Source of the DNA: Macrostomum lignano
Lineage: Eukaryota
Direction of reading: 5' to 3'
Length of the DNA stretch: 64,000 nucleotides
Assembly (NCBI GenBank): GCA_002269645.1
Contig: NIVC01000020.1
Coordinates: forward strand, 434,001 to 498,000
Position 1 is the stretch's first letter. Each line of letters begins with the position of its first letter. This document shows, one piece after another, positions 6,913-37,835 of the stretch. The notes under the pieces were generated by a model. That model did no database searches, was not told where the DNA came from, and was given only the letters and a program-made list of their open reading frames with translations. The position numbers and the translations under genes are program-made.

Positions 6913-7013
6913 ACTTAAAATGAAACGGCAATTGACTTGCTAGAAGGTAGACGACTATTTAAATTCATGCACTTTTCTGCCTCCTTCATCCTGTGCGTTC
7001 GCTCCATGACTGG

Positions 7014-10000: not shown

Positions 10001-10050
10001 TGCTCTGCCGACAAACCACAACTTCCCCAATTCTTCAGACCTGCTAGGAG
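7014..10050 (-). pseudogene. Duplicated pol segment (RT, RNase H, integrase), frameshifted, lacking gag and PR
   Basis: ORFs 9119-9787 (RT), 8034-9194 (RH), 7765-8364 and 7121-8011 (IN) mirror 10354-13388; the HHCC cysteines are lost at a poly-T substitution. Confidence 0.9.
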
Positions 10051-10252
10051 CACCCTCGGGACCAAACTGTTCGTACACGATTCGCAGAAACGGATCACTC
10101 AATACTCGATACGCTTCATTTATTTCTTGTGCCTGCCGCCGAGCGCCTGGCCCCACCTTGTCTGGATGTGCGTGACGTATGCGCTGGTAGTAAGCCTTCT
10201 TAACCTGCTGCGTGGTCGCATCAGATGCGACACCCAGGACTTCGTAGTACAT
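9914..10252 (-). pseudogene. Truncated second J-domain ORF fused out of frame to the pol linker
   Basis: Identical to the first ~68 aa of 6061-6912, then switches at the duplication junction. Confidence 0.85.
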
Positions 10253-10353
10253 ACTTAAAATGAAACGGCAATTGACTTGCTAGAAGGTAGACGACTATTT
10301 AAATTCATGCACTTTTCTGCCTCCTTCATCCTGTGCGTTCGCTCCATGACTGG

Positions 10354-13300
10354 TCAGTGACGCACGGGATTACCAAAAAACTGCGTAGGGACCCGGTTTC
10401 TAACCGGGTTACGACGCTCTGGCGTGGGTGGCCTACCCGGACTGCCAGGGACTCCGAAATCTACTGCTTCGGGTTGAGGCAGCTGCACCCAATCACTCTC
10501 GCCGTCTTCATCATCATCCTCCTCCTCGTTGTGCTCATCGAATTCCCGTTGCTCAGGACCGGTACACGTTGCCCATCTTGCTCGCTCCGTTCAGCGCGAC
10601 GGTAAAGGTGCAAGTTGTTAAAGTGCACGGTTTTCCTCTTCCGGTTGTTCGTCGGGTGCCCTACCCTGTATCGAGTCGCACTTTCTCGCTTGAACACTTT
10701 CACCGGTCCAGTCCAGTACACATGGAACTTCTTTGCTTCGCCGGTCTCCAGACAAGGCTGATACACGTAGACCAGATCTCCTTCGTTGAATCCCGAACCA
10801 CGAGCTCCCGTGTCGTACTGATCCTTTTGCTGTCTCTGATACGTTGACAGGTTGGTCCGCACGGTGTCGCCAGCTGCTTGCATCTTGCGACGTAGTTCAG
10901 CAACATATACCGTTGTTTCACTCGGCTGCACTTGAGGCGGCTTGTTCATCAGGTCAACAGGCAGTCGCATCTCCTCACCGTACACCAGGTAGTGCGGTGT
11001 GTAGCCGGTTCCTCGATGTACACTGGACCGATACGCCATTAGCACCGCCGGTATAAATTCTTCCCAACTTGACTGCGCTGCTCCATTTTCGACCATCAGG
11101 CTTCTCAAGCTGGTGCCGAGCGTACGATTAAGCTTTCCACTTGACCGTTCCCCATTGGGTGGTACGGTGTCGTTCTTGTCTTCTTGATGCCTAGCAACGA
11201 GCACGGTTCCGTAGTTAATCTTAACTCGAAATTTCGGCCTTGATCCGAGTGCAGGAACTGTGGACATCCGTGTTGACTGATCCAGCGTTCGACAAACACC
11301 TTTGCACAGCTTGCCGCCTTCTGGTTTCGAAGCGGGTACGCATCCGGCCATTTGGTGAAAGCATCTTGAATCGTCAGGACGTACATGTTTCCTTTCCTTG
11401 TTCGTGGAAGCGGTCCGACAATGTCAACCATGACACGTTCAAATGGAGCACCAGTTTGAATCGGCTCGAGGGGTGCTCGGCCTCGCTGCTTCGTCTTTGA
11501 TTTTCCGCAGGTTACACAGCATCGAATGAACTCTTCTACCAGTCTGCCAAGGCCCGGAAACCAAAATCGCGAGGTCACTTTTTTCTTCGTCTTGAAAAAT
11601 CCGCTGTGCGCTCCACTGGCTCCACTGTGTAATTCTGAGATGACCAAATTCGTCGTTTCTGCCGTCAGAACAACTTTGAAATTCTTCTCTGTCCTGATGC
11701 ACAGCAGGTCATTGACCATGCACAGTTCATCTTTTCTGGCCATCAGCGCCTTCCAGTAGGGCGTTCCTGGTCCCGGGTGCCCAGTTCCAAGCGACTCTAG
11801 TCGCCCTGTCTGCACTGCCTGTCTTAGCGGACGTAGTTCAGGATGCTTGAGCTGCGCTTCATGGACGCGTTGTTGGAGTCCCGACTCGAATGTTACTGCA
11901 CCGACCTCAGGCTGCTCCTTGCAGGACGGGCACGTGGTTGCTCCAAAGCGGCTTCTCGGCCTACGTGATAACCCGTCGGCATTCCCATGGTCCCGGCCTG
12001 CTCGATGTATGATCGTGTAGTCAAAGCAGGCTAGCTGCTCCAGCCATCTCGCAGCTTGACCTTCAATATTCTTGAATGAATGCAGCCAGCGCAGACTGCT
12101 GTGGTCGGTTCGAAGAATGAAGTGCTTCCCGAGCAGAAAGTACTTGAATTGGCGAATAAAGGTGACTGCAGCGAGGAGCTCAACGCGGGTCGTGCAGTTA
12201 TTCCGCTCTGCAGATGACAGGGTGCGTGATCCGTACGCAATGACTTTCTCCGACCCGTCCGGTTGCAGCTGAGATAGGACGCCTCCGATTCCCACTGACG
12301 AACTGCCATCTGTATCCAAGATGAACGGCGGTGCATCTGGAGCGAAGTTCGGGTACGCCATGACCTGTTCTCCGGTCAGCGCCTCTTTCAGCCGCTGGAA
12401 GGCTTCTTCTTGGGCCGGTCCCCACTGGAACGGTGATGTAGATCTCGTCAGTTCCGTCAACGGTTCAGCTGTGTGCGAAAAATCTTGAATAAAACGCCTG
12501 TAGTAGCCAACAGTGCCGAGAAACGCTTGCACATCCTTGAAAGTGCATGGTGTCGGCCACTCGCAAATGCTCGGACCTTCTCTGGGTCAGTTCCGATGCC
12601 GTCCGCCGAGACTCGATGACCCAGAAAGCTCACTTCGGAACTGAGCAGCTCGCACTTCTTCGGATTCAGCTTTAGATTTGCACTTCTCAGCCGCTGAAAA
12701 ATTTCACTCAACCTGGCCAGATGATCTTCCACGGTGTTGGAAAAAACTAAAATGTCGTCCAGATACACGAGGCATATCTTCCAGGCCAATGGGTGCAGCA
12801 CAGTTTGCATGATGCGGCTGAACGTTGCTGGGCCGTTGGTGACACCAAACGGCATCACTAGCCATCGGAATTGCCCGCGGTGCGGCACAGCAAATGCGGT
12901 CTTGTCTCGGTCTTCTGCAGCCACCGGAACTTGATGGTAGCCAGATCGCAGATCTAGGGAACTGTACACGGCTGTTCCATGTAGCGCTTCTAGGGCTTCA
13001 TCGACGCGAGGTAGCGGAATGGCGTCCTTAACGGTCACGTCGTTGACCCGACGATTGTCCACGCACATTCGAAGCGAATTGTCTTTCTTTCGCACACAGA
13101 CCACTGGCGAGCTCCATGGGGACATTGCTCTTCGATTTTTCCTTGCGCCAGAAGCTCATCAAGTTGCTCGTCTACTTCTGCTCGAAGATGTGGCGGCAGT
13201 CGTCGTGGAGCCTGTTTGATAGGTCTTGCCGTCCCCGTGTCGATTCGGTGCTCACTGACATTCGTTACCGTGGCCTCGGCAAGTTCGGTTGCAAATACGT

Positions 13301-14273
13301 CTCTGTTGCACTGGATTAGCGCTTTGAACTTCGCCTCTTGCTCTGCCGACAAACCACAACTTCCCCAATTCTTCAGACCTGCTAGGAGCTCCTCGGCCGC
13401 CTCACTCTCTTCTTGGCGAGGCTTTTCCAGTGTCGGAGCTGCATCCTTGGCTTCACTCAACGTTGCTAGCGCGATGAGCTGCAGCAGATCGAGCGGATGG
13501 TACCACGCAACTGTCTCGCCCTTGCGGATGGTGACAGGAACCTCCGAGAAGTTTGCCAGCCGTACGGGGACTCGAGCGTCTTCCGTGGGCATCACTAAGG
13601 ACCTCGCTAACACCGCGGAACCTGCGCGCTTCCGGTCTTGACTTTCCTCAATTACTCCTGGGCTTCTCGTGCATCGTCCTCTTCCACCCTTCATTAAGAA
13701 TCGACCAGATGCTATCTTCTCTGCTCCAGGCGGAACCACAATTCGCTCCGACGCTAGAATGCGACACACAGTCGCAGGCCGTTGGTGAAAACGTAGCGGA
13801 ACGCTGGCATCTGCTAGGTGAAGTACACCATCTTGAAAATCGATGCGGCAGTTGTGCTTAAGCAGAAAGTCGGCTCCCATTAACAGCTCGTAGGAAACCG
13901 ACGAGGATACTAGAGCTGTTATACTCAATTCGCTCTCGCCTATCATTAACGGAAGTTGGCAGATCGCACTGATGTTGATTGGGCTGCCGTTGGCAGCATG
14001 GATTGTTGATTTATGAGGCTGAATACTCGGTGGCGATTTTGTCCAAGTCTTTCTCACTCTCTGAAGCAAAGCTTCATTTATGATCGTCACAGCAGCGCCC
14101 GAGTCGACACATGCAGAGACCACCTGACCACCGATTTGACAGGACACGTACACACTGGTGGGATGCATCATCAGACTTGGTGTGTCGACCGGCTGCTGAC
14201 TGGACGGGGGAGGCTTGGCTGACTGGATTAGAGGCCCTGGCTCCCCTTCCCAGGACCTCTGTTGAAGTTTCCC
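10354..14273 (-). CDS. pol: Gypsy Pol (protease, RT, RNase H, integrase) with several single-base frameshifts
   Basis: VDSGAAVTII (PR); SPWSSPVV, LDLRSGYHQV and YLDDILV (RT); ILDTDGS and ILRTDH (RH); H..H..C..C, VDIVG, HSDQG, NGQVE and WTGPVKV (IN). Frame breaks near 13125, 12535, 11150 and 10540; the tail RRNPVRNRVP...PVRH ends in a stop at 10354. Confidence 0.9.
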
Positions 14274-15333
14274 GACCGACAATTCTTGGCCAGATGACCC
14301 GGCTGGTTGCACGCGTAGCAACGCCTCGGACCGCCGGTCCTCGCCGCTGGGTTTGACTGCGGTTGCTGCATCATTCCGGAGCGACTCGGGCACTCGCGCG
14401 CTAGGTGGCCGATGTTTCCACACTGAAAGCAAGCACCGGCCTGCCTCTGCTGCTGCCCTGCCAGATGACTAGGGGTCGCGCCATACACGCAGGCCCCTCT
14501 GCCACCTTGCAACCCAGGCCCCGGGCCGCGCGAACGCGCAGACCCAGAAGACAAGGGTGCAGCAGACTGTTGAGGAGGCGGTGCCTGATTCAGCCGCTTC
14601 AACTGCCCTTCCAGGTCTCGAATCCGTTGTTGAAGTTCTTCTAATCCGTCTGAACTGGTGCCTCCGGTATTCACCGCACCAACGGTCGAAGCAATTTTCC
14701 GGTAAGCCTGTTCTGAACCTGTCGGCTTGGCGGCTCGACCGGCGGCCTCCTTTCGTCGCACGCAACGAACCGCATCCGTAAGGGTGGCGGGTTGCTGCAG
14801 CATAACGTACTCTTTGACATGTTCCGGTGCTCGAATGCCCTTCTTGAAGCGGTCTCTGGCAAAGCTGTTGATGATTCCGACTGGCATGTCTTCATCTGGG
14901 TACGCGTTCCTTGCTAACTCTAACAGCACATCCGCATAAGTCTCATACGTCTCGCCCTCTTTTTGGACTCGCGACTCCAGCTCCAGCTTGAAATCCTCGG
15001 CCGTGCGGTGCTGCTGGAACCTTTCTAGGAGTGCATCGGTGAAATCATCATACGTGGCACCCTCCTCCAGCTGAATATTCTCCACTGCCGCGAAAGCCGT
15101 ATTTAGATCCAAGAAGCTGAGGAGATGAGGCCGGCGATCGTCTTCCACTATCTGCGATGCTTCACAATAGGCATTGAACCTCTGCAACCATAGCCTGAAA
15201 TTATCTCCAATGAGTACTTCGGGGGCTTCGCTGGCCGCTGTACATTCTGTGCCACGTTGATGTCCTGCTGCAACGCCCGACGAACTGACGCCGACATTAA
15301 CTCCACCAGTCTATTCACACCTTCGTCTCCCAT
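14228..15333 (-). CDS. gag: Gypsy Gag with two CCHC zinc knuckles (one frameshift near 15215)
   Basis: MGDEGVNRL... joins ...LQRFNAYCEASQI; CFQCGNIGHLAREC and CYACNQPGHLAKNC. Confidence 0.88.
14267..14273 (-). promoter_or_regulatory. -1 ribosomal frameshift slippery heptamer G GGA AAC (gag to pol)
   Basis: Gag frame TCG GGA AAC (S-G-N) and pol frame GGG AAA CTT (G-K-L), just after the second zinc knuckle; canonical X XXY YYZ phasing. Confidence 0.8.
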
Positions 15334-15490
15334 CACGACAGCGCAATCGTATGCTCGACACCGACAGAAAAACAACGACGTAAAAACGACACTAACAAAT
15401 CGGAAGCAATCCCTCCTCCAAACAGATCCCTAGCAGCACTAATCTAAACTATTCTAACACGAGCTCATAAACACCCTCAAGCACAATACG

Positions 15491-15508
15491 ATCCTGGTCA
15501 CGGCACCA
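15491..15508 (-). other. Primer binding site complementary to the tRNA-His 3' end
   Basis: Minus strand TGGTGCCGTGACCAGGAT one base after the 5' LTR; its complement ATCCTGGTCACGGCA-CCA is the 3' end of invertebrate tRNA-His(GUG) as I recall it. Confidence 0.8.
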
Positions 15509-15509
15509 A

Positions 15510-17299
15510 TGTTGTGTCCCGAGACGGACCAGCCAGCTACGTCTGGCGCTCTGTACGAGCAGGAAAACGCAGCCCCAGTCCTGCTGCTTGCCAACCCACT
15601 GTCGCACAAACGCGCAGGCAGTAGGCCAGCAACCAGGGTCGCAGCGAACGCACAGGCCCCGGTGACAAAGTCCTAGAGGCACTTGACCCCGAAATAACAG
15701 GAACAGAACGATACTTACTGTGGCGCGGATACTTGGCGCGCTGGGCGTCTTTGTTGAAGACGATTGTTGGCACGCTTGTTTTTGGTTTATTGTCATATAC
15801 TATTTGCGGCGAAGGAGTCAGAGGAGAAGCGGTCGCATGGGGGGGAGAGGACAGGAGCGCACGCCAATAAATATCTGCCAGCACAACATGGGGTGGGGCA
15901 AAAGCTGCAGGGTAAGAGAAAAGGCGGGGTGCGTAGAGAGAGCGAGCGGGGATTGGCTGCAGCCACACAAAACGCGACTGGGGGGTAGAAAACCAGAATT
16001 ACAGAAAACAGCGACAGCCATGAGAGAGCACGGAGGGGGAGGGATAATAATAATCAGGGGTGAGAAAGTTGCAGACATAGGCTGGACAAATAAACAACTA
16101 CAATAATATTCCTTTTTACGTTCTATCTGACAAAAACTGCAACCAATTTGGCCACGGCTCAGCCTGACGCAGCCGCAGCAATTTTCCATAGACAGCCACC
16201 GCTAGCGGCAACCAATCTGGCAAAAACTGCGAGCTATTCCGCCAGCTTGAAGATAGCAGCTCAATAGCATAACAATAACGATAAAGAATGTTAACAATAC
16301 ATGCACGAAGTCAGAACATTATGTCCTCAGCATTCAAGCACCGATTGAAGTACGTCTGGGAATGGTTGATCCAGCGCAGGCACTTGAGAGGCGTGATGCA
16401 GTTCAGTGCTTGCTGCACTTCTCTCTTCAGAATGCGCATCCTGTGCTGATGCAGTGTCGCACCTGCTGCAGCAGCCAGTCCAGTATCTGCCACCTCGCGC
16501 TGAATGGCAGGTGATTGCAATTGCGTTTTCAGCTTGGCCTTCAGCGCTGAGCCTGCGTACTCCGCCGGGTTGATGAACGGCGAGTATGGAGGCAGGAATC
16601 GGTGAGCATGACCTTCAGACATCCCAGGGACACCTAGGTGAGCGCGAGCCCCATCGGACAGTAGCACAAACTCCTCTTCCATCAGAACATCGATCTCAGA
16701 GAGGAATTCCATGAAGTGCTCGTTCGAATTGAACAATGGTGTCCACCATAGCCTCCGTCAGCGCCATCCTCTTCACTCCTCCTTTTGGCAGAGTGCCAAC
16801 TCTACCAGTTCGTTCATACGTGGTCACGATGTTCCTCACTGTCGGTTTCTTCATCCCCATCATTCTGCCAAGCTCTCCCCAGTCGTCACCACTCCTGTAC
16901 GCTCTCACGATTCGCTCTCGATCCAGCTGACTTATCTTTTGGTACGGCCCACGATTCGCCATCAGAGCAGCTGCTATCTTCAAGCCGGCAAAACAGCTCG
17001 CAGTTTTCACCAAATTGGCTGCCGCCAGCGGTGGCTGTCTATGGAAAATTCTATGTCTATGGTCAGGCTGAGCCGTGGCCAAATTGGTTGCAGCTTTCAT
17101 CAAATAGAACGTAAAAAGGTATAGTTCATCAATTGATTGGGTCTAGTGCAGTGGCACCAAAAAAATAAATAAAATACTCTAAGAAAATAGCTCACAACAA
17201 GTTGCAAGCATGGAAGGGGTGGGGAAGGTTGGCAGAGGGAGAGAGAGAGATAGAGAGACTACAGTAAGGGCAAATACATTGAGTTACGAATTCACAACA
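15510..17299 (-). repeat. 5' LTR, interrupted by a 1013-bp DNA transposon
   Basis: 15510-16108 plus 17122-17299 match the 3' LTR. Confidence 0.95.
16109..17121 (-). mobile_element. Internally deleted Tc1/IS630-like (DDE_3) transposon nested in the 5' LTR
   Basis: TA duplication (16107-08 and 17122-23); ~150 bp imperfect TIRs (TTCCTTTTTACG.../...CGTAAAAAGGTA); HTH MANRGPYQKISQLDRERIVRAY...; C-terminal LLSDGARAH...LPPYSPFINPAE; the central catalytic region is missing. Confidence 0.92.
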
Positions 17300-18015
17300 A
17301 TTTATAAATTTATCAACTTGATCCAATTCATTATTAAAAATTGACAACAGTATTCAATCCTAAAGGGCAAAAAAATTAACATGCATTAGCATAAATATGG
17401 AATCAAATATACGACTACGAACTACATATTATAAAAGTATAAATTGCCTAAAAGTCTAACTAAAAAATCACAGATAAGAGCTCTGGAAATGGCATATACA
17501 AGCTATAGGCATTTCAAGACCTCGTAGCAAGCGTCCCCTCCAAAAAGACAGCACAGCACAGCACACGTGCGAAGCACATTGAGCCTTCTGGCATCAAAGC
17601 TGAACAAAACCATCAACAAAATAAATTAATGAGCAGCTGAATTTGCTCTAAAAAGGCCAGTTTATCTGGTGCTTCAAAAGCTGTGTGCAGCGCATCAGGA
17701 AGTGCATCGAAGTGGATGGGGATTACATTGAGAGACTGGATTGAGATGCTGGTGTCTGAGGCACTGCCCACTTTGAATATCTGCTTGGGTTTCATCATCA
17801 TCTACCTACATGTGTAATACGTAATAAATCATTTTAAAAACTACGCAAAAATCAATATTGTTTTTAACCATTTCAATTGATAACATCTAAAGACAGAAAA
17901 TACCGCCACAAAGTCAAAAAATTAATCAGGCAGTTTATTGAGTTCACATTAAACTTCACCTTACTGTCCGTTATAGGTTATACCAGATCACAGCACAAAA
18001 TAGCATTGGTGCTTC

Positions 18016-18516
18016 TCAAACTGTGCTCTCGAGGCTAACAATTTCATACCTGTCACCACTGTGGCACTCCTCAGTGATTCCAACACTGTATATGCCACAG
18101 AGTGCTGCAATGGCGGCTCCAGTGCCAGCAGCCGCTGTTCCTGACAGTCCAGCTGCTCCAATGCTCTGGCGAACAGTCACAACAAATGGGGTGATGCCTC
18201 CTCCGAAAGCAATTCCACCTGGTTGAAATCCAAGCAGACCAGCAGCCCAAGGTGCAGCAAAAAAGGATCCAACAGCAGCTGCTCCTCCAGCAGCAAGGCA
18301 TGCTCCTGCTTTCCAACCATTGTAACCTGAGTGAGCAACAACAATGCAGAAGGCCAAATGTAAAGCCATGCGAAGATAGCCTTGTTGCAGGCAAGTGCAA
18401 AGATTTATTGAAAAGGTGGACTTACATATTTTTACTTTTTTGTTGTCAGCTAAACATGGTGCAAGTTGGATAGAAACCAGTAAAGCCAAAACTAGAAGCA
18501 CTTTAGCTGACTGCAT
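18016..18516 (-). CDS. IFI27/IFI6 (ISG12 family)-like protein copy A, exons 18426-18516 and 18016-18326, 133 aa
   Basis: Hydrophobic signal-like N-terminus MQSAKVLLVLALLVSIQLAPCLA; GTAAGT...CAG 99-nt intron, phase 1; Gly/Ala-rich LLGFQPGGIA-FGGG...QSIGAAGLS; AATAAA ~75 nt after the stop. Confidence 0.8.
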   Translation of the reverse strand: MQSAKVLLVLALLVSIQLAPCLADNKKVKICKSTFSINLCTCLQQGYLRMALHLAFCIVVAHSGYNGWKAGACLAAGGAAAVGSFFAAPWAAGLLGFQPGGIAFGGGITPFVVTVRQSIGAAGLSGTAAAGTGAAIAALCGIYSVGITEECHSGDRYEIVSLESTV

Positions 18517-19305
18517 TTTTGTTAACTCTAAAAGTTTTTGAAAAATATAATATATAGTTATATATTAATATTTAACAAATGAAAATCAGCCAAGCACAAA
18601 TACTGCATGATTTAATATAACCTTATAATAATGTTCAGATGCATACTTGATATATTCTAGTTAAAAACTTATTTGAGAATGTTTTCTAAATTATTTTTTA
18701 TTTAGGCATCGAAAACTAAGAACACCGAAAAGTGGGATATCAAAATACCTAGAGTAGAACTGAAAAATATGGCCATAGATACCAAAAAAGTTTGAATTGT
18801 ATTCTTTCAGAAATGTTTATTTATTCAGGAGCACAGACAATTATTTGAATGCATATTTTAATTCATCATACTTTCAATTACAGTTCAACAGTAAAGTAAA
18901 TAGTGATTCATATGAGTGAATTTTTAATGTTATTTTTCACACTTTAACTATCCTTTTTTCCTTCTGTATAAAAAACGATCATTTAGCTAGTTCTTTTTTC
19001 TTTCGACTATCCAACTATTTAGCTATTCATCCATTTTGTAATTCAAGTGTATACGCAGAATAGGCCAATGTTTGAACTTCTGTTCATTGCAATTATTGGA
19101 TAAAAAGCTCGTAAATTCATATTCTTTTTTGAATTAAAAACCAGCGCAATATGAAACTTACACTGAATGCGGTGATTAATGATGAAATGAATTTTTAGTG
19201 AAGGTAAAAACCTACTAAATAAAATCGAACGAACGAACCTCTGAATATACACTGTACGTCCTGCACGTTCGTGGACCTCTCACGTGGTTTAAAATATCGA
19301 GCTTC

Positions 19306-19345
19306 TGAATTGAAAGCGAAAATTCTTGAAAGTGAAAACCGAAAA
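19306..19345. promoter_or_regulatory. Cluster of IRF-E/ISRE-like GAAANNGAAA motifs upstream of IFI27-like copy A
   Basis: gaattGAAAGCGAAAattcttGAAAGTGAAAaccGAAA; nearly identical at 35531-35569 while adjacent sequence diverges. Confidence 0.5.
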
Positions 19346-22300
19346 TTCTTTATTGCAATTATTATTAACAGCAATGACGTTACTAGTGAATCAGCTCTTG
19401 CTTTTGAATATTTTTGCAAAAATCATTTATTTAGGACTAAACTGCCATTATTTTTTGTTATACCGAAAGGCAGTGTTCTTTGCTATAAATCCGAGCATTT
19501 TAAACCCTTGATGGGTCGTTCTCAAATTCTGGGAGGAGCGAAAATTTTAACAATTTTCGGAACATTTACTATTGTTACTGCCGTATTGAAAATAATAGGA
19601 CACTTTCATCTGTGAATAAAGATAATTTTTGGGTTGAAATTTATGTTGCAAAAGTGTTTTAAGTTGTCTTGCGGTATTAGGCGATATTAGGTGATGAAAA
19701 AATTCAAATTCAATCACTTCACCGATGTCCTAATTTTTGACACTATGATGTCTGTAGCTAAAAAAAGTTGTTGTTGTGTTGAAAACTTGCTATATTACAT
19801 TTAAAATGAAAGCTTATATAAATTTAATTTAAGATTTTTTTAAAGCTTAATAAACTGTACTATAAATGATTTTATAGACGCTTAACTGTACGCCTAGCAT
19901 TTCCGGTGGGATAGCCTCTTTGCGTCTCACAAATTGTATTTTTCAGCTGACGTCTAGAATGTGCGCTTAAAATGATACTTTTTGATGCAGATAATTAGAA
20001 AAACATGTCTTATTATCTTTTTGTAAAAAATTGTTATGAAATAGAGCACTATTGTTGATAAAAATAATTAAAAGCAACCATGCATCGCAATAAACTCCTA
20101 CTTTGAAGCACAAAATAAATATCCTGTAACCACACTAGCATTCTCCATGGAGCACCTTTTGAGCTGAAATTTTACACAGATATCCAGTAAAGTAAACTGA
20201 GCAAATGATTTTTTTTGTTTTTGAAAATACTTCAATTTGGCTATGTATCAGTTAGTTCATTGGACATATTTATTATATTTTTATTAGAATCCTTGTAACC
20301 AAGCTACAGAGAAACATGTGCAAAACTGGACCTTGAAATTTGACCTGAATGATCAGCAAATGTGTATCTCGAAATGATTTTTTTTGTTTTCATCAAGTCA
20401 TTCTATGCTAATTTTTTCTGAAGGGAAAGATACCATGTATTTAGAGTCAATAGGGGAAGCATTTAGACTTATTCAATAGTCATTAAAATTGCAACTATAT
20501 TATTATAATATAGTAATAATATTATACATGTATTATATAGTAATATTAACTTCTAAGATGCCCTTATAAATTTAAGTAAAGACAACAGGCCTTAATTAAT
20601 TAATCAGCATTTTGAAGAAACTGACCTTATACAGATGGGCCCCAAGCTAAGAAATGAATGTAGAGCTTATTTCGTGTAAGGTATAAAAATCAATTTATTA
20701 TAATATTAAATACTCCTAATAAATTGGTTAAATTAGTTATTTACCTTGAATTAATTTAATTTTGTTTTTTTGGTCTTTAAATCCTTTATTTTATTTTTAT
20801 TGTTTTTTTCTATTTTTTTTTCTGTTTTTAATAATTAAATATATAAATTTGTTTCACTTCTTACTGCATTTAAATAGAGTACCTTTCTACTATACTATAG
20901 AAGTATAGTAAAAGTATATGATAAAAAAGTATAGTAAAAAATTTTCTTTGGTTTAATCCCAGCTTGCCTCAGTTTTTTAGTCTTAATACGAGCTAGATAG
21001 TAAGTGTTGATTAATTTGCTCCACCACCTTTTGCCACGGAAACAGCACATGTCGGACATGCAACACTCTTCCTGATCCCTGGATTCAAGATGACTGCTTC
21101 TGCTTCTTCAATGCTTGAAAACTGAGCTCATGGAGCTTTAGGTTATGCTGTCAGAGTGCTGCTGCCGGTGCTGTGTGTGTGTATGTGTGTGTCTTCTGCG
21201 GGTAGGTTCCCTGTCCCTCAGTTTAGCCACTGTTGTGGGCTAACTGGAGGAATTGCCGTTGTCGGTGCTGCAGGTGGCACTGCATGGTAGTATTGACGCT
21301 GTCAGTGACGCTGGCAAAGGCTAGGTGCCGTCATTGTCAGGAGGACATGCGTGTGCTGCTTAGAACAATTTCTCACATTCGACTGGACTCGTATCTGGTG
21401 CAGTCTGGTGTATTCACTGAGATTGTGTGGATCTGCCTCCTCGCATCACCTCAACCAGGCTCAATTTCTTTTGTAGAATTTTCGTGCGCTGCTTAACTGC
21501 ATCTTGTGCCTGCTGAGTGATGCCAAGAATTGTGCCACACAATAATTTGGCCCATAAACTACTCGTATATTATACATATGTATGCACAGCACACACACGC
21601 AGTTCATTCACATTAAACGTACTAGTTAATGGAATTCTCATCTCATGAGCTCTAGTCTATGGACAAACCTGAAATTACTAGAATATCTAGACAGATCTAA
21701 ACTTCTTTGAGCAGCGCGCTGCGCTGCGAGCAAATACATGTAGATTCCTTAGCGCAACTAATTAATAGTGTAGTACAGTCTACAGCCTGAAGTAGCCTGT
21801 GTAAGATGCGGAGGGATGATTTTTGCATAGGAAGCCACTACGGTAAGGTTGATGGAACTATGGGGAGGTGAGAGATTCAAAGCGAGGGACGGAAGCCATG
21901 CATAGTTCGATCATAAGTTTGATTATTGCATGAGTCTGGGGATGCATTAACGAGAGGCAGACGAGAGCATAGAAATAAAGCGGGCTAAATATATTAACAC
22001 ACAAAATTACATGTACTAGCTAGTAATTTCAGAATGGTCAGCGACTCCTCCGATTTGTATCCGCGACCGCGTGCCCACAAATCCCCCGGCAGACCCTGTC
22101 GCAGTTGGTGGTTGTGCACAGAATACAATGTTAATTTTCGAGCTTCTCTGCAAAAAAATGTGTGATGCACTCAAGATGCGTGCTATAGTCTACTTCTTTG
22201 ATTGATGGCTGGGTTTTGCCTTTTCGCTTGTGATCATCAAAAGCTTGGGCGTCATTGCTACTGGTGTTTCAGTGTGCGCATTATGTCTGGTTATCATATT

Positions 22301-24226: not shown

Positions 24227-27200
24227 AGGTACAGAAAATCCTGGTTGCAGTCCCGCATCCAGAAGGTCAGCCAGCGTACGCCATCACGCAAGGGACCCAA
24301 GCATGCGGCACTGCAGAGATCCGGCGCAGAGATACGGTGCGTCAACTGCGGGAGGGCCGGGCACGCCGCCCGAGCCTTGGAGTGTCCAGCGAAGGACAAG
24401 ACCTGCTTGCACTGCCACAGGATCGGATACCTTAAAGCTTGCTGCCGACAGCAACGCCAGGTTCGCACCGTAAAGGACGAAGACGACGAGCCATTCGAAG
24501 TGTCTGCAGTAGAATATGAATATGAAGAGTCGCTCCTTAACTTCGCGACGTGCAGCATTGCTGACATTGACGTCAGGCTCCTATTGGACACGGGCTCAAG
24601 AGTCAACATCATCAACGAGAAGACCGTGAAATGCCTGCCGAAGCAACCCGTCATCACGCCGACTCCGAAGCAGCTAGCTGTTCTCATACACAGGCTCTGC
24701 AATTGACGTGCTCGGGACCGCAGAGCTGTGCGTTGTGCACCGCGGCAAGTCCGCCGTCTGCCGCTTCTTCATCGCTCGACGAGGTGCCAACATCCTCGGT
24801 CTGGACGGCATGGACAAGCTGGGATTCTCAATCCGAGTCAACGCAATCAGCAGCATCGATGATATCGCTGGAGAGTTCCCGGTAATCTTCGACGGCATCG
24901 GTATGGCCAAGAAGGTTTGCCATCGACCACAGCTGCGCCAGGATGCAACACCGACAGTTGAGTCGCTGCGCCGGGTGCCGCTGGCACTTCAGGACCGCGT
25001 GAAGGACGAGCTAAGCAAGATGGAGGCTGCAGGTGTCATCGAGAAGATTGATGCCTCTCCCTGGGTGTCCAATCTAGTCGTATCCAAGAAGAAGAATGGC
25101 GACCTGCGACTGTGCGTTGACCTGCGCAACTGCAACCAAGCAATCAACCCGGATAAGTTTCCCATGCCGACCCAGGAGGAGCTGGCCGCAGAGTTTGCAG
25201 GCGCGCAGATCTTCAGCAAGCTGGACCTGAAGCAAAGCTACCTACAGATCCCACTGCACCCCGGCAGTAGGCAGCTGACCGCGTTCATCACTCACTGCGG
25301 GCTCTACCAGTTCACGAGGGTTCCATTTCTGGACCATTCTGGACCATTCTGGACCATTCTGGCCGACATCAAGGGTATCCGGCACTCAGAGGACGACATC
25401 GTCATTCACGGCGTCAACTCGGACGAGCACGACAAGCGGCTTTAGGCAGTACTCGAACGTCTCAGCGAAAACGGGGTGACGCTGAACAAGGAGAAATGCC
25501 AGATCGGCGTCCCGGAGATCGTGTTCTTGGGCTGCAGGATCTCAGCCGATGGAGTTCGACCGTCTAAGTCTAACATCGAAGACGTGCTCCGCATCCCGGC
25601 ACCGACTACAGCACGGGGAGTCTCGTCATTCCTGGCAACCGTCAACTACTTCGCCAAGTTCATATCCGACTTCGCTAAGACAGCGAGACCACTGCGATAG
25701 CTGCTCAAGAAGGACACCGTCTTCCACTGGACGAGCGAGTGCGACGCTGCTTTCGCTGAGCTTAAGCAACAGCTGACGAGTCCGCCAGTGCTAATCCACT
25801 TCGACTGCAACGCTGACACCATCGTCGAGTGCGACGTGTCTGACTTCGCGCTTGGCGCGGTGCTGCTTCAACGCGTAGGCGAGTCAGAGAAGCCGGTGGC
25901 CTACGCCACGCGAGCACTGACGCCAACGGAGTCCAGATACTCAGCTAGCGAGAAAGAGGCTCTGGCGTGCATCTGGGCTCTCGAGCGCTGGCACATCTAT
26001 ACCTACGGCAGACGGCTGACTTTGCGCACTGACCATTTGGCTCTCAAGACACTGCTGTGTACCCACCCAAGGCGCCGGGCACAAGCTGCTGCGCATCCAC
26101 CGATGGAACGACCAGCTCCTGCAGTACAACTTCAGCGTCGAGTATAAGCCTGGAAAGGACAACGTTGTGCCAGCCTTCTTGTCCCGTTTCGAACGACCAC
26201 CTGAGTCGACAGACAGCGGCGATGACGACGACGAGATGGCCGATATCCACCAGGTGCTAGACAGAATTCTATCAGCCGAGCTGCTGAACAAGCACTCGCA
26301 GGCCGATCCGCTCATTCGCAGTGTCTCCGCAAAGCTTCAAGCCAACTGGAAGGGGCCGCCAGCAGATGAGGAGAAAATCTTCTTCAAGCTCCGAGACGAG
26401 ATGTCAACGGTCGGAAGCTTCCTGGTTCGCGGAAACCGCGCGGTTGTGCCCGAGAGTCTGCGCGCCACTGCACTAGCGCTGATCCACCAGGGACATTGCG
26501 GCATCATCATGATGAAGCACCGAGCTCGCGATGCGGTCTGGTGGCCGGGAATCGACGCCCAACTGGAGCATCTGGCCAAGTCCTGCGTCAGCTGCTGCCT
26601 GGCGGAGAAGTGGAAGTGACCCGCTGCTCCATCGCAGACGACCGAGTAACCCAAAGAGCCATGCACACGATTTAGCTGGACTTTTTCGGCGAGATCCACG
26701 AAGCGCCGGCCAGCAGCCGATTTGCAATCGTTGCCATTGACCTGTACTTCAAGTGGCCAGAGATTCGGACTACGGCTTCAGTGACGGCCGAGGTCATCGC
26801 CGACTTTCTCAAGGACCTGTTCGCTCGATGGGGACTGCCAGGCAAGATCGTGACCGACAACGGGCGGCAGTTAACCAGCCACGCCTTCGATGAGTTTCTA
26901 GTCAGCCACGGTGTGCAGCGCGCGAGGACCTTGCTGTACCATCCACGGTCAAACTCGAACGTCGAGCGCCTCAACCGCACCCTGAAGGAGTCGCTGAAGC
27001 CTGAAGGCGCACCTTAAGGACGGCATCAGCTTCAAGGAGGCAATCTGCGAGTTCCTGCAATGCTACCGGTCGACAGCGAATGCAACCACGGGCCTGACGC
27101 CGGCTGAGCTGATGGTCGGTCGGCCGTTTCGAGGACCTCTGAGCCAGTGGAGCCGAGGCATCCGCCCCCTGAGTCAAACGGTGCCATCGGGGACCGAGCG

Positions 27201-27870: not shown

Positions 27871-28251
27871 AACTATAATATAAGTGCGCCCAGGCCTTTC
27901 AAGCCTTTGTGACTTTTTCTACCCTGCAATCGCTTCTCGCATCTTATTCATTTGGCCACGCTGCCTCAAAGTACAATAGGTCTGCCTCCTATCAAAAGCA
28001 ATAACAATTTTTGTGTTGAAAAATTAAAACTTCCCATCTCCGTAGTGTATAGTTCGGCGAAAAGTTGTCTTCAAAACATTTACCATAGATTTCGAGCGTA
28101 GCGTCCTATATATATGTTACTTGAGTATTCCTTGCATGCAGATATTTATAGATACATGTACATGCATGACAACATTAAGTGATGCAGCAGGGGTCCGAGC
28201 CACATTAAATTTTATTTCTGTTTTTGGTCCCAATCCGGAAATCCAAAAGTC

Positions 28252-34097: not shown

Positions 34098-34621
34098 TTA
34101 AACTGTGCTCTTGAGGCTAACAATTTCATAGCTGTCGCCACTGTGGCACTGCTCTGTGATTCCAACATTGTATATGCCACAGTATGCTGCAATGGCGGCT
34201 CCAGTGCCAGCAGCCGCTGTTCCTGACAGTCCAGCTGCTCCAATGCTTTGGCCGAGAGACACAATGAATGGGGTGATGCCTCCTCCGAAAGCTTGCATCC
34301 AGGCTGCAATTGAGCCAGCGGCAATTCCACCTGCTTTAAATCCAAGCAGACCAACAGCCCATGGTGCGACAACAAAGGACCCAGCAGCAGCTGCTCCTCC
34401 AATAGCAAGGCATGTTCCTACTTTCCAGTAGTTATAACCTGAGTGAGTAACAAGCATGTAGAATGTAAAGCCATGCAAGGAGAGCCTTGTTGCAGGCAAG
34501 TGCAAATATTTAGTTAAAAAGTAGACTTACAAGTTTTCACTTTTTTGTTGTCAGCTAAACATGGTGCAAGTTGGATAGAAACCAGAAGAGCCAAGACTAG
34601 AAGCACTTTAGCTGACTGCAT
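34098..34621 (-). CDS. IFI27/IFI6 (ISG12 family)-like protein copy B, exons 34531-34621 and 34098-34438, 143 aa
   Basis: Same signal exon; 92-nt GTAAGT...CAG phase-1 intron; full ISG12 motif LLGFKAGGIAAGSIAAWMQAFGGG...GQSIGAAG. Confidence 0.85.
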
Positions 34622-34942
34622 TCTTGTCAATACTGAAAGTTATTGAAAAATCAATAAATAGTTATATATTTAACAAATGAACATCAGCCAAGCATAGACA
34701 CTAATTGCACTTGATTTACTATAATGTTCAGAAGCATACTTGATATACTCTATTTACAAAACTGATATACTTTATTAAAGCTTATTATAAATTTCTATCA
34801 TTTCTTCATTTCATTTGCACATGTCTCTATTTAGCTTGTACTCTGTTTTCTCTTGGGCCTCTATATCCAGTTCAATCTTTGGATTCTTGTCTTTTCCCCT
34901 TGCTGCCTTCTGGTTGGTTGTTTAATCTAAAATCTTGCCTCT

Positions 34943-35014
34943 TTAGGCTAAACATGGTCCAAGTCGGATATAAACCAGAAGAGTTAAAATGAGAAACACT
35001 TTAGCTGACTGCAT
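34943..35014 (-). pseudogene. Third, truncated copy of the IFI27-like signal-peptide exon
   Basis: MQSAKVFLILTLLVYIRLGPCLA followed by a TAA stop; the upstream acceptor context is shared. Confidence 0.7.
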
Positions 35015-35530
35015 TTTTGTCAATTCTAAAAGTTATTTTAAAATATAGAAAATACATTTATAAGTTATATTTTAATAACAAATATAAAGAGTAGCTTTCT
35101 AAATATATATACAAACAAAATTTAATTTGAGTCAAGAAGAGAGTTAGGACAATTGATAAAATGGTGTGTAGTATATGGAGAAGGAAAGGCAGGAGGCATA
35201 GGCCTACTTGATATATTCTAGTGGGAAAAACTCTAATATAGGCCTATTCATTTAATTTTTATTCCCATTCTGTTATTCATCTTTATTATCTGCAGCAAAA
35301 GACATACAAAAAAAACATATAAAAAACTAAATTTCAAACATTCTGGACAAGTAAATTCTGTTAATTCAAAGTAAAGTCATAGCACAACATTAAACTTACA
35401 CTGGGTGCGGTAAGTACTGATATTTTTAACGAAGGTAAAACCTTGAAATAAAAACGAACGAGTATATGCAAAGAGTACGTCTCGCAGATAGCGGTCTTGT
35501 CTTGCCTCGTGAGCCCGCTCTATATATATC

Positions 35531-35569
35531 GAATTGAAATCGAAAATGCTTGAAAGTGAAAACCGAAAA
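35531..35569. promoter_or_regulatory. Cluster of IRF-E/ISRE-like motifs upstream of IFI27-like copy B
   Basis: gaattGAAATCGAAAatgcttGAAAGTGAAAaccGAAA. Confidence 0.5.
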
Positions 35570-37835
35570 ATCACTCATTAAAATTATTTTTCAAAAAATG
35601 TAAAGAAACTAAATAATCAGCACTTTATTGTTGATAGATTTTCCGAATTCAGAAATTGAGACTAAAATATCATTCGTTTTTGCTTTATTAAAAGGCAGAG
35701 TTACTTCGCTATAAATCCGGGCATTCCAAACCCTTGTGTTAATATCGTCAAATTTATAGAATAATACAGCATATTGCCCGTATAATTACAGCATAATGTT
35801 ATAATATAATAACGCAAAGCTATTAAAATTATCGAGCATCAGGTCTTATGAAAGAAGAGAAGCAAACCTCGTCCAAAGCTTCGATGAAGCGTCAGGCGAT
35901 GATACAGCAGGAAGCCGGGTGACCCAAGCAATTAAGGCTGTCATTACTTTTGTCATTACGACGAGTATGCATGATCAAAATAGAATATATAGTTGTGGCT
36001 TTAATCACTTTGGCAGCATCCAAAGTAACTAACTACATATGTATTTAACTAAACTGAAGAGTCTGTGCTTCCAAATCTGCCTTTCTCAACCGCGTACTCT
36101 TCCGCTTATTGTCCTGGAGAATTTCTCGAAACTAACCTAGCTTACTGATTGACTCCACTAGAAATCCCCACATAGAAGTGATAGTCTTGGGGATCTCAAA
36201 TGTATGGCCCATCCCTTTGAATGGAGAGCCGGGAGCGACTCACTCTGCGATCTCAGTGTTGCAAATGCTACGATCCTGTTCCCCGATCCCGCGTCACCGG
36301 CCGCTCCTCTCTTTCATTGCTGGTGTCAGCCTGGGGCTTTGCAGACTCAACGGGAACTAAAACCCACAGTCCCTCAGCATGCGCGGCCGCAGCAATGCCG
36401 GATGTCCTCTGCGTGGCAGCTGTGACAACAATGACTTGGCCAAGTCAGGGGTATGGAACTCAGAAATCAATTTTGAGATTTTGCTGACCGACTTCTTCTG
36501 CAATCTTCTTCTCCTATGGCTCGGCATCCCCGGCTGTGATTGACGCGGCTTATTGCGGAAGCGGGAGAGCAGCAGCAGCATTGAGTGGCTGGCCGCCCAC
36601 TGCTCAGCGGAGCTCTCAGCCCGTGTTGACCCGCAGCACGGGAGGGAAATTGCGGCCTGAAGTGCCGCCGGACAGCCCTTGAATGCCAGCTGCTGGCTGC
36701 CGCCTTCTGCTTTGCTCTGACGGTGCGGCAACTGTTGACAGCTCAGATCAGTTTGATTGAGACCTGAGCTCAACTCTGCTCACGCTGAACTGAATAATTT
36801 CAACTTTATTTCTGTACTTTATGGCGTGCTGTATCTGTGATGCCGAAAGAACAGATATCTAGCTGGTCTGGCAGCCACAGTCACTCATATATCCAGCTGA
36901 TCCAGTCTCCACAATCTTACACGCCCAATATAGTAAGCATTTCCAGGTGCAAAAATTCCTATACATGTATGTGAAACTACGGAAGCACAGGTGGAATTTG
37001 AGCAGTGCAACACCAGACGCCATTATCTTGAGGCGTCTCAAGAAAATCAAACACGGGAGCCTCGGCCTCGGCGGGAGGCTGCAGCCAGCGGCAGTCCCGG
37101 AGCCCCAAAATCAATGGGCGGCAGGGCTGCAATTTTCAGCTGGCGGCAGAGCGCAGCTTTCGAGTGCCAAAGGGGGGGAGGCGGGAGTGTTGGGCCCGGC
37201 GGGAGCGGCTCTCGATCCCCGCCCTCCTGTCAGTCCTCACTGGGAGCGGTGCGGCTCCTCCCAGCCCCCCCCCCCGTCACTCAATTGTCTCGCTGGCCCA
37301 GCCTGCACTTTCTCCTCAAATCCCCAGCCACCCCCAGCAGCAGTTTGAGCAGGATTTTGAGTCGGACAGGAGGGCTTGGCAGCGCCTCTACCACAGCGTC
37401 TCCGGTCCCACCTGGAATTGTGAATTCTGCCCCCCCCGTCTCTTATCCCAGTGTGAGCCTCGCCTTGCTCAGCCATGCAAGGCAGCAGTGGGCCTTCATA
37501 GGCCTCAGGCCTCCCCCTTTTCACTAGCAGAACACGCAAATTAAAGCCCCCACCCCCCAACCCACTGCTGTGCCAGCCACTCTCTGTTGAAAATCAATGG
37601 AATCGCTCTGTTAAACTCGGGTCCAATTACTCATTTAGATTGATTCACTGCTCATCGCGAACCGCTGTGCCGATGCGGGCGGGCCAGCCTGATGGAACTG
37701 GGCCACTCGTACTAAATGGGATATCGACCAGTAGCTCTTGCGCTGTCCCTGCACTTCGCAAATCACAAATAAATTGCAATATCTCGACTTCTCAACTTCA
37801 AAGCTGTTCTCGTTGAAACATTTTGTAGGTTTTCA

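What the first reader, a model, noticed from the sequence alone, without database searches (positions are those of the whole stretch)
18016..19345. Invertebrate ISG12/IFI27-like genes with a conserved ISRE/IRF-E-like motif cluster: a possible interferon-like module
Seen: both IFI27-like paralogs have, 800-950 bp upstream of the ATG, a ~38-bp block with three tandem GAAA-N2/3-GAAA motifs, including GAAAGTGAAA. The block differs at only 2 positions between copies (19306-19345 vs 35531-35569), while sequence just to its left is poorly alignable. A splice acceptor 11 nt before each ATG implies the transcription start lies further upstream, nearer the motifs. Established: vertebrate IFI27/IFI6 are induced through ISREs (TTTCNNTTTC) bound by IRF/ISGF3, and IRFs exist in several invertebrate phyla that lack interferon. 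Inference: an IRF-to-ISG12 antiviral or nucleic-acid-sensing circuit conserved in this animal, sitting in a TE-dense locus.
Basis: partly seen in the sequence, partly recalled or inferred. Interest (0 to 1): 0.7.

Follow-up and report, generated by a model that had tools for sequence, protein, structure and literature searches.

The report
ISRE-like promoter of flatworm IFI6-like genes
Two duplicated flatworm (Macrostomum) genes of the IFI6/IFI27 family share a short, unusually well-kept promoter block that looks like the DNA switch mammals use to turn these genes on during virus infection, but whether it works that way is untested and a similar IRF-to-IFI6 link is already published for shrimp.

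Summary
The window is Macrostomum flatworm DNA, about 90% identical to and syntenic with M. lignano contigs. It carries two minus-strand paralogs of the Ifi-6-16 (IFI6/IFI27) family. Each has a 42-bp block (19307-19348; 35531-35572; 39/42 identical) made of two tandem 16-bp units with GAAA-N2-GAAA cores plus a third GAAA-N3-GAAA.

The block is the best-conserved stretch of a promoter region that is otherwise 64% identical (permutation P about 6e-4). A cluster like this is rare in the local AT-rich background (about 1e-4 per kb). It sits directly upstream of a TATA box, an ATG-free predicted non-coding exon and a conserved GTAAGT donor, so it is a proximal promoter element, not a distant one.

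- I could not test whether Macrostomum has an IRF. Schistosoma and planarians do, according to the literature.
- Four further M. lignano paralogs lack the block.
- The gene family also occurs in nematodes and fungi, which lack IRFs.
- Between close copies the block evolves no more slowly than its flanks.
- I could not check induction, the transcription start, SL trans-splicing or genome-wide copy number.

An IRF/STAT-dependent IFI6-16 gene is already known in shrimp, so this is a candidate new member of a known kind.

The parts
19307..19348 (-). Copy 1 ISRE/IRF-E-like block. It consists of two tandem 16-bp units (TTGAAAGCGAAAATTC, TTGAAAGTGAAAACCG) plus a third half-site pair, GAAAACCGAAAA, read on the + strand. 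It also contains a perfect 3-unit heat-shock element, GAAaaTTCttGAA, at 19318-19330.
   Evidence: (D16)
35531..35572 (-). Copy 2 ISRE/IRF-E-like block (GAAATCGAAA, GAAAGTGAAA, GAAAACCGAAA), 39/42 identical to copy 1. The heat-shock-element centre is TGC here, not TTC.
35520..35529 (-). Copy 2 TATA box (ATATATATAG on the gene strand), 1 nt from the block. Also present in M. lignano L001 as ATATATATGG.
   Evidence: read directly from the sequence
19289..19298 (-). Copy 1 weaker TATA-like element (GATATTTTAA on the gene strand), about 9 nt from the block.
   Evidence: read directly from the sequence
19162..19266 (-). Copy 1 predicted non-coding exon 1. The 5' end is inferred as about 30 nt after the TATA-like element. 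The 3' end is the conserved donor CAGT|GTAAGT (intron starts at 19161). It contains no ATG.
   Evidence: This is inference; no RNA data were available.
35400..35498 (-). Copy 2 predicted non-coding exon 1 (donor GTAAGT at 35399-35394). It contains no ATG.
   Evidence: inference
18528..19161 (-). Copy 1 predicted intron 1 (634 nt). It is largely unalignable with copy 2 and ends at ttttag.
34633..35399 (-). Copy 2 predicted intron 1 (767 nt). It contains a decayed extra copy of the ATG exon at 34931-35014 with an in-frame stop.
   Evidence: (D3)
18426..18527 (-). Copy 1 exon 2: an 11-nt leader, the ATG at 18516 and the signal-peptide-like N-terminus.
18016..18326 (-). Copy 1 exon 3: Ifi-6-16 domain with an in-frame 10-aa deletion. 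The stop codon is at 18018-18016 and AATAAA at 17939-17934.
34531..34632 (-). Copy 2 exon 2 (ATG at 34621).
34098..34438 (-). Copy 2 exon 3: complete Ifi-6-16 domain. AATAAA is at 34027-34022.
19466..19509 (-). Copy 1 distal conserved island, 74-80% identical to copy 2 at 35691-35735. It contains TATAAAT on the + strand (19484-19490). Its function is unknown, and the paralogous homology ends just beyond it.
35691..35735 (-). Copy 2 distal conserved island (TATAAAT on the + strand at 35710-35716).

Best explanation
The window comes from a Macrostomum flatworm: M. lignano, a homeologous region of it, or a sibling species. Two tandemly duplicated three-exon genes encode small proteins of the IFI6/IFI27 (Ifi-6-16) family. 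Each protein has a signal-peptide-like N-terminus followed by glycine-rich membrane helices.

Both genes keep, directly upstream of a TATA box and a predicted non-coding first exon, a 42-bp element built from two tandem 16-bp units. Each unit has the IRF core GAAA-N2-GAAA.

The most likely working is a proximal promoter element bound by an IRF-family factor (flatworms have an IRF4-like gene). This would make transcription of these effector genes inducible by infection or nucleic-acid sensing, as in vertebrate IFI6/IFI27 and in shrimp LvIFI6-16.

Shown here: the gene family, the motif cluster, its rarity, its position next to the TATA box and donor, and its better conservation than the flanks between the old paralogs.

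Inferred: the transcription start, cis-splicing of exon 1, IRF binding, and inducibility.
For: Species and synteny.

Gene family:
- Pfam Ifi-6-16 scores 29.1 bits for copy 2.
- All 26 profile hits carry PF06140.

Motif cluster:
- 4 of the 5 GAAANNGAAA in 64 kb lie in the two blocks.
- The cluster has P about 1e-4 per kb in the local background.

Footprint:
- The block is the best 42-bp window of the copy 1/copy 2 promoter alignment: 39/42 against 64% overall, permutation P = 6e-4.
- Intron 1 and the core promoter are nearly unalignable between the two copies.
- All four GAAA cores of the two 12-mers are invariant in copy 1, copy 2 and M. lignano L001.
- The six substitutions fall in spacers, the linker and the third half-site.

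Proximal position:
- The TATA box abuts the block.
- The following roughly 100 nt have no ATG in either copy, against about 2 per 100 nt elsewhere.
- That stretch ends in a conserved GTAAGT donor matching the M. lignano donor motif GT[G/A]AG.

Context from papers:
- Shrimp LvIFI6-16 is virus-induced and depends on LvIRF and LvSTAT (PMC9144789).
- An IRF4-like gene was cloned from Schistosoma mansoni and has a planarian homolog (PMC2194728).
- M. lignano keeps RIG-I-like receptors and six Mx genes.
Against: - I did not show that Macrostomum has an IRF. The IRF profile search listed only vertebrate proteins. A planarian study found only a 'diverged' IRF3/4-like gene, and it had no effect in their assay.
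- All block copies descend from one ancestral promoter, so the sample size is effectively one.
- Four other M. lignano paralogs (L003) have no block and no ISRE-like cluster upstream.
- Between copy 2 and L001 (94% identical) the block has 3 substitutions in 42 nt, no fewer than its flanks. One of them destroys the third half-site.
- The zero-of-six substitutions in the cores is only P about 0.06.
- The 3' flank is AAAAY, not the ACT of the canonical ISRE.
- The cluster could have arisen by a neutral 16-bp microduplication of a single motif.
- Coding regions show gene conversion (dS 0.16; mosaic 100% tracts), so a short conversion tract could mimic a footprint.
- About 30-39% of M. lignano genes are SL trans-spliced. 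The acceptor 11 nt before the ATG could be a trans-splice site.
- The family occurs in IRF-less nematodes and fungi.
Confidence: 0.4

Rival explanations
1. The block is a functional proximal promoter element, but it is read by a factor other than an IRF. Candidates are heat-shock factor (copy 1 has a perfect GAAaaTTCttGAA), a PRDM1/Blimp-1-like zinc-finger protein (AGTGAAA), or a lineage-specific factor. The genes would then respond to stress or be tissue-specific rather than antiviral.
For: - Copy 1 carries a perfect 3-unit heat-shock element at 19318-19330.
- Heat-shock factor is universal in eukaryotes (textbook knowledge), whereas an IRF in Macrostomum is unshown.
- Conservation and position argue for function but do not identify the factor.
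Against: - The central TTC of the heat-shock element is TGC in copy 2 and in M. lignano L001, so that element is not what is conserved.
- What is invariant in all three promoters is the four GAAA cores at N2 spacing, which is the IRF pattern.
- The PRDM1-type AGTGAAAG is AGTGAAAA here, and AGCGAAAA in L001.
Confidence: 0.2
2. The block has no regulatory function. A single chance GAAAGYGAAAA in AT-rich DNA was copied by a 16-bp microduplication. It survived in the paralogs by descent and by short gene-conversion tracts.
For: - The two units are an obvious tandem duplicate.
- The window-wide motif count is not above chance.
- The block is no better conserved than its flanks between copy 2 and L001, and one half-site was lost.
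- Gene conversion is active at this locus.
- The L003 paralogs do without the block.
Against: - Between the old paralogs the block stands out, with P = 6e-4.
- Substitutions avoid the four cores.
- It lies exactly where a proximal activator site is expected, abutting the TATA box.
Confidence: 0.22
3. The block is not in the promoter of the coding exons as modelled. One possibility is that transcription starts further upstream, near the conserved distal TATAAAT island, so the block is 5'-UTR RNA. The other is that the ATG exon receives the spliced leader in trans and is driven from elsewhere, possibly as part of an operon.
For: - 30-39% of M. lignano transcripts are SL trans-spliced.
- The acceptor 11 nt before the ATG is conserved in all paralogs, including the L003 copies. 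Their homology starts only about 36 nt before the ATG.
- A perfectly conserved TATAAAT-containing island lies 135 nt beyond the block.
Against: - A conserved canonical donor lies upstream in cis. According to the trans-splicing paper, that favours cis-splicing.
- The stretch between the distal island and the block has 3 ATGs in each copy, while the predicted exon 1 has none.
- The distal TATAAAT is on the opposite strand.
Confidence: 0.13
4. The block belongs to a dispersed repeat or transposable-element fragment that happened to land upstream of the ancestral gene. It might or might not have been co-opted, as ISRE-bearing endogenous retroviruses were in mammals.
For: The locus is rich in transposable elements and minisatellites. 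Only about 130 kb of Macrostomum DNA could be searched.
Against: - No other copy exists in the 64-kb window or in loci L001-L003, only the homologous promoter positions.
- No terminal inverted repeats flank the unit.
Confidence: 0.05

Closest known systems
Shrimp LvIFI6-16 (Litopenaeus vannamei), an invertebrate IFI6-16 gene under IRF and JAK/STAT control (PMC9144789)
   Same: - A small protein with an N-terminal signal peptide plus an Ifi-6-16 domain (136 aa, against 133-143 aa here).
- An invertebrate without interferon.
- The published model is IRF/STAT -> IFI6-16 -> antiviral effect.
   Different: - In shrimp the dependence on IRF and STAT and the induction by virus were measured, but no promoter element was described. 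The word ISRE does not occur in that paper.
- Here only a candidate cis-element is seen, with no expression data.
- The phylum is different: Platyhelminthes, not Arthropoda.
Vertebrate ISRE-driven IFI6 (6-16) and IFI27 (ISG12) promoters, bound by ISGF3/IRF9-STAT1-STAT2 and IRF1 (established knowledge, recalled from memory)
   Same: - The same gene family.
- GAAA-N2-GAAA cores in tandem copies within about 100 bp of the transcription start.
- From memory, the human 6-16 promoter also carries its ISRE in a tandem repeat.
   Different: - Flatworms have no known interferon, STAT2 or IRF9.
- The 3' flank is AAAAY rather than ACT.
- Nothing has been shown about binding or induction.
- The resemblance may be convergent, because the family also exists in IRF-less nematodes and fungi.
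IRF-E / PRDI sites bound by IRF1, IRF2, IRF4 and IRF8 homodimers (consensus GAAA[G/C][T/C]GAAA[G/C][T/C], recalled from memory)
   Same: GAAAGCGAAA and GAAAGTGAAA match the 10-nt core exactly. The only flatworm IRF characterised so far is IRF4-like.
   Different: Position 11 is A rather than G/C. Copy 2 unit 1 has T at spacer position 1. Flatworm IRF binding specificity is unknown.
Heat-shock element (nGAAnnTTCnnGAAn) bound by HSF
   Same: Copy 1 has a perfect three-unit element at the junction of the two 16-bp units.
   Different: The middle unit is TGC in copy 2 and in M. lignano L001, so the element is not conserved.

Membership tests
Ifi-6-16 protein family (Pfam PF06140; IFI6, IFI27/ISG12) | Significant match to the Ifi-6-16 domain profile | tested here: met
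   - Copy 2 scores 29.1 bits, equal to the gathering cut-off, E = 9e-7.
- The M. lignano homologs P0001 and P0002 carry precomputed PF06140.
- All 26 hits of the Macrostomum profile carry PF06140.
- Copy 1 alone is below the cut-off (10 bits) because of a 10-aa in-frame deletion.
Ifi-6-16 protein family (Pfam PF06140; IFI6, IFI27/ISG12) | Small protein (about 100-150 aa) with glycine/alanine-rich membrane helices. The IFI6 type has an N-terminal signal peptide. | tested here: met
   The proteins are 133 and 143 aa. Copy 2 aligns collinearly with human IFI6 from the signal peptide through the GG/GF/GGG motifs. The signal peptide was judged by eye, not with a predictor.
ISRE / IRF-E cis-element | Sequence: tandem GAAA half-sites at 2-nt spacing (GAAANNGAAA). 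The canonical ISRE adds a 3' CT. | tested here: inconclusive
   The core is met twice per promoter and is invariant in three promoters. The 3' flank is AAAAT/AAAAC, not ACT, and the third pair has N3 spacing.
ISRE / IRF-E cis-element | The host encodes an IRF-family DNA-binding protein | tested here: inconclusive
   The IRF profile search returned 1190 hits, but only the top 120 are listed and all are vertebrate. The literature reports an IRF4-like gene in Schistosoma with a planarian homolog, and only a 'diverged' one in Schmidtea. Macrostomum itself was not examined.
ISRE / IRF-E cis-element | Bound by IRF/ISGF3 and required for induction by virus, dsRNA or cytokine | not testable with these tools
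   This needs gel-shift (EMSA) or DAP-seq assays, qPCR after challenge, IRF RNAi, and a reporter with mutated cores.
ISRE / IRF-E cis-element | Located in the promoter or enhancer of the regulated gene | tested here: inconclusive
   The block abuts a TATA box. It is followed by an ATG-free stretch of about 100 nt and a conserved donor. No RNA 5'-end data were available, and SL trans-splicing remains an open alternative.
Heat-shock element | At least three contiguous inverted nGAAn units | tested here: not met
   Met only in copy 1 (GAAaaTTCttGAA). Copy 2 and L001 have GAAaaTGCttGAA.
Dispersed repeat / transposable-element-borne motif | Many copies at unrelated genomic sites | tested here: inconclusive
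   No extra copy was found in the window or in L001-L003, about 130 kb in total. No whole Macrostomum genome was searchable with these tools.

The most novel reading that the evidence does not exclude
An early-branching flatworm retains an ancestral bilaterian circuit: an IRF binding a tandem ISRE-like element that drives an IFI6/IFI27 effector. On this reading the ISRE-to-ISG wiring seen in vertebrates, and implied in shrimp, predates interferon and can be read directly in the promoter sequence. Macrostomum lignano already has transgenesis, so it would be a tractable model for dissecting this.
Probability: 0.25. Interest if true: 0.6.

Novelty: new member of a known kind. Interest (0 to 1): 0.4.

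Why it matters
If the block is a working IRF site, it would be the first defined cis-element linking an IRF to an IFI6/IFI27-type effector in Spiralia. It would extend the 'interferon-like response without interferon' picture, known from shrimp, oysters and cnidarians, to flatworms. In flatworms antiviral transcription factors are poorly known: a recent planarian study could not name the factor acting downstream of TBK1.

M. lignano has stable transgenesis with promoters of 1-2.5 kb, so the 370-bp unit could be tested directly. It could also serve as an infection- or dsRNA-responsive reporter.

If the block is not functional, the finding is an ordinary paralog footprint.

Tried and rejected
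- First gene model: an acceptor at caacaag|G put copy 2 out of frame. I replaced it with the annotated M. lignano splice sites.
- Literature: there was nothing on IFI6/IFI27 or IRF in M. lignano. The Nehyba 2009 paper on IRF evolution is not held. The planarian paper has no supplements held.
- L003 paralogs: I searched them for the block, for exon 1 and for any ISRE cluster, and found none.
- A transposable-element origin for the promoter unit: there are no flanking inverted repeats and no Rfam family in the region.
- STAT (GAS, TTCNNNGAA) reading: the spacing in TTCttGAA is 2, not 3-4, so I rejected it by inspection.
- An AP-1-like TGAGTGA lies next to the block in copy 2 and L001 but is absent in copy 1, so I did not pursue it.
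- A conserved divergent + strand gene driven by the distal TATAAAT: homology ends at the predicted start and no conserved ORF follows, so I rejected it.
Full report
**What the window is.** The two putative proteins find only two close relatives among 5.8 billion sequences, both from the flatworm Macrostomum lignano. The contigs that encode them (L001/L002 = NIVC01000693/694; L003 = NIVC01000064) were fetched. The window is collinear with L001/L002 over tens of kilobases at about 88-90% nucleotide identity. It is therefore Macrostomum DNA: a homeologous region of M. lignano or a sibling species. The locus is rich in transposable elements and repeats. A Gypsy-type LTR retrotransposon with protease, RNase H and integrase pieces lies at about 6-16 kb. 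A reverse-transcriptase fragment lies at 24.7-25.4 kb. There are many minisatellites.

**The genes.** Both genes are on the minus strand. My first splice model put copy 2 out of frame. The annotated M. lignano proteins show the true junction...KVK(T/I) T|gtaagt ... ctcactcag|GTTAY = Cys-Tyr-Asn. With it, both copies are intact:
- Copy 1: ATG 18516, exon 18527-18426, intron 18425-18327, exon 18326-18016, 133 aa.
- Copy 2: ATG 34621, exon 34632-34531, intron 34530-34439, exon 34438-34098, 143 aa.

The evidence for family membership is as follows:
- Copy 2 matches Pfam Ifi-6-16 at 29.1 bits, exactly the curated cut-off.
- Copy 1 falls below the cut-off because it lacks ten residues (AAGSIAAWMQ) in the core of the domain.
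- A profile of the four Macrostomum proteins retrieves 26 proteins, every one carrying PF06140. They come from vertebrates (named IFI27-like), a sponge, a mussel and a spider. They also come from the nematode Steinernema and from glomeromycete fungi.

The family assignment is sound. However, the family is far older and wider than the IRF system, so membership alone says nothing about regulation.

**The block.** On the + strand, 19307-19348 reads GAATTGAAAGCGAAAATTCTTGAAAGTGAAAACCGAAAATTC. It is a tandem duplicate of a 16-bp unit, TTGAAAGYGAAAAYYS, followed by a further CGAAAA. This gives two GAAA-N2-GAAA and one GAAA-N3-GAAA.

Only five GAAANNGAAA occur on both strands of the 64-kb window, which is no more than shuffles give (3.2 expected). 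Four of the five are in these two blocks. Under first- and third-order Markov models trained on the neighbouring AT-rich DNA, a cluster of three within 45 bp occurs in about 1 in 10,000 one-kilobase sequences. The two blocks are homologous by descent, so this is one event, and a 16-bp microduplication of a single chance motif could have produced it.

**Where the block sits.** Copy 1, copy 2 and L001 were aligned on the gene strand. In that alignment the block is followed at once by ATATATATAG in copy 2, ATATATATGG in L001 and a weaker GATATTTTAA in copy 1. About 100 nt follow, ending in a conserved ACCGCAnnCAGT|GTAAGT. This matches the M. lignano cis-donor motif GT[G/A]AG reported in PMC8629364. 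The 100 nt contain no ATG in either copy. The introns and the stretch beyond the block carry about two ATGs per 100 nt.

The acceptor 11 nt before the ATG is conserved in every paralog. The simplest model is a three-exon gene whose non-coding exon 1 starts about 30 nt after the TATA box. That places the block at roughly -35 to -80.

M. lignano trans-splices 30-39% of its transcripts. The same paper notes that an upstream donor in cis disfavours trans-splicing, which supports the cis model. Only 5'-end data can settle the question.

**Conservation.** The duplicated unit runs from about 17300 to 19510 (33430 to 35745 in copy 2). Its parts have diverged very unevenly:
- Coding exons, intron 2 and the 3' flank are 80-100% identical. 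They contain mosaic tracts in which copy 1 is identical to L001. Synonymous divergence is only 0.16. This indicates gene conversion.
- Intron 1 and the core promoter are almost unalignable.
- In the 384 aligned promoter columns, copy 1 and copy 2 are 64% identical. The best 42-column window is exactly the block, at 39/42. Only 3 of 5000 column shuffles reach that value.
- A second island with TATAAAT on the opposite strand (19466-19509) and the donor region are the other conservation peaks.

Across copy 1, copy 2 and L001 the four GAAA cores of the two 12-mers never change. The six substitutions fall in the N2 spacers, the linker, the 3' flank and the third half-site. That is the pattern expected for IRF-type sites, but it is only marginal statistically (about 0.06).

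Three observations count against a strong claim:
- Between the close pair copy 2 and L001 (94% identical) the block has three changes, no fewer than its flanks.
- In that same comparison L001 has lost the third half-site.
- A short conversion tract could mimic a footprint.

**Is the linkage general?** No. L003 carries four further tandem paralogs. Their mutual homology begins only about 36 nt before the ATG. Neither the block, nor exon 1, nor any ISRE-like cluster is found anywhere in that 26.8-kb locus. The association is confined to one promoter lineage.

**Which factor binds?**
- The cores GAAAGCGAAA and GAAAGTGAAA match the IRF-E core exactly. The canonical ISRE 3' CT is absent.
- Copy 1 also contains a perfect heat-shock element, GAAaaTTCttGAA. 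Its central TTC is TGC in copy 2 and L001, so that is not the conserved feature.
- A STAT site is excluded by its spacing.

I could not show whether Macrostomum has an IRF. The profile search showed only vertebrate rows, and no searchable collection here holds the Macrostomum genome.

The literature helps on this point:
- An IRF4-like gene with a DNA-binding domain and an association domain was cloned from Schistosoma mansoni and is flagged as having a planarian homolog (PMC2194728).
- A 2026 planarian study found only a diverged IRF3/4-like gene that had no effect in its assay (PMC13563047).
- M. lignano, an early-branching flatworm, keeps RIG-I-like receptors and six Mx genes.

An IRF in Macrostomum is therefore likely, but it has not been demonstrated.

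**Comparison with what is known.** The idea itself is not new. In the shrimp Litopenaeus vannamei, LvIFI6-16 has the same signal peptide plus domain architecture and is 136 aa long. It is strongly induced by white spot syndrome virus, and its expression falls on RNAi of LvIRF or LvSTAT (PMC9144789). That paper describes no promoter element. The present finding would add a candidate cis-element and a new phylum.

**Verdict.**
- The best reading is a proximal, probably functional, IRF-type promoter element of one IFI6-like gene lineage (confidence about 0.4).
- The rivals are another transcription factor, a neutral relic, a wrong promoter model, or a dispersed repeat.
- Novelty: a new member of a known kind.
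- Interest is moderate, mainly because it can be tested directly in a transgenic flatworm model.

Noticed in passing
window 47137-48645 (+), Rfam hit at 48487-48600: An intronless-looking Shaker/Kv-type potassium channel ORF of 502 aa (BTB_2 + Ion_trans). It carries a match to Rfam RF00485, the potassium channel RNA editing signal, at 53 bits (gathering score 51). This is a possible A-to-I editing hairpin in a flatworm Kv gene.
   Followed up: no
window 34931-35014 (-); L001 9619-9678: A decayed extra copy of the ATG/signal-peptide exon, with its own ttttag acceptor and an in-frame stop. It sits inside the predicted intron 1 of copy 2 and of the M. lignano ortholog, but not of copy 1.
   Followed up: partly
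window 18207-18216 versus 34300-34330: Copy 1 has an in-frame 30-nt deletion that removes AAGSIAAWMQ from the core of the Ifi-6-16 domain. The reading frame is otherwise intact (dN/dS about 0.5 against copy 2). The copy may be a functionally altered or decaying paralog.
   Followed up: partly
window 17300-17930, 30950-31443, 33430-34017 (-): A segment just downstream of each IFI6-like gene is present in three copies in the window. It starts about 100-150 nt after the AATAAA signal and includes an acceptor-like tgtag and an ATG-initiated short ORF. The ORF tested, that of the 30877-31284 copy, has no Pfam match. The spacing would fit an M. lignano-style operon partner.
   Followed up: partly
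window 18260-18376 and 17400-17830 versus L001: Identity is mosaic. Parts of copy 1 are 93-100% identical to the M. lignano L001 gene, which is otherwise the counterpart of copy 2. This indicates gene conversion among paralogs.
   Followed up: partly
L003 (NIVC01000064) 4430-5011, 10001-10550, 16244-16824, 25020-25589: Four tandem IFI6-like paralogs whose shared homology starts only about 36 nt before the ATG. The annotated gene P0002 spans two of them (10001-16825), which looks like a fused gene model.
   Followed up: partly
window ~6000-16200 (-): A Gypsy-type LTR retrotransposon (zinc-knuckle gag, aspartyl protease, RNase H, integrase). It has an internal tandem duplication: near-identical RNase H/integrase ORFs at 8034-9194 and 11105-12532, and 296-aa ORFs at 7121-8011 and 10461-11351. 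It was not assembled or examined further.
   Followed up: no
window 28117-28965 (-): This ORF's Pfam 'Autotransporter' hit (30.6 bits, with no single matching stretch) lies on a 48-bp x 15 minisatellite (28252-28978). It is almost certainly a repeat artefact.
   Followed up: no
window 39578-41771, 44227-45647, 53058-54118, 59851-60738, 62160-62934: Long minisatellite arrays with 20-, 29-, 33-, 13- and 25-bp units, up to 110 copies. They account for the strong GC- and AT-skew swings in the right half of the window.
   Followed up: no
window 35573-35585; L001 ~9044-9056: An AP-1-like TGAGTGA directly abuts the distal end of the block in copy 2 and L001, an arrangement like an IRF-AP-1 composite site. 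It is absent in copy 1.
   Followed up: no
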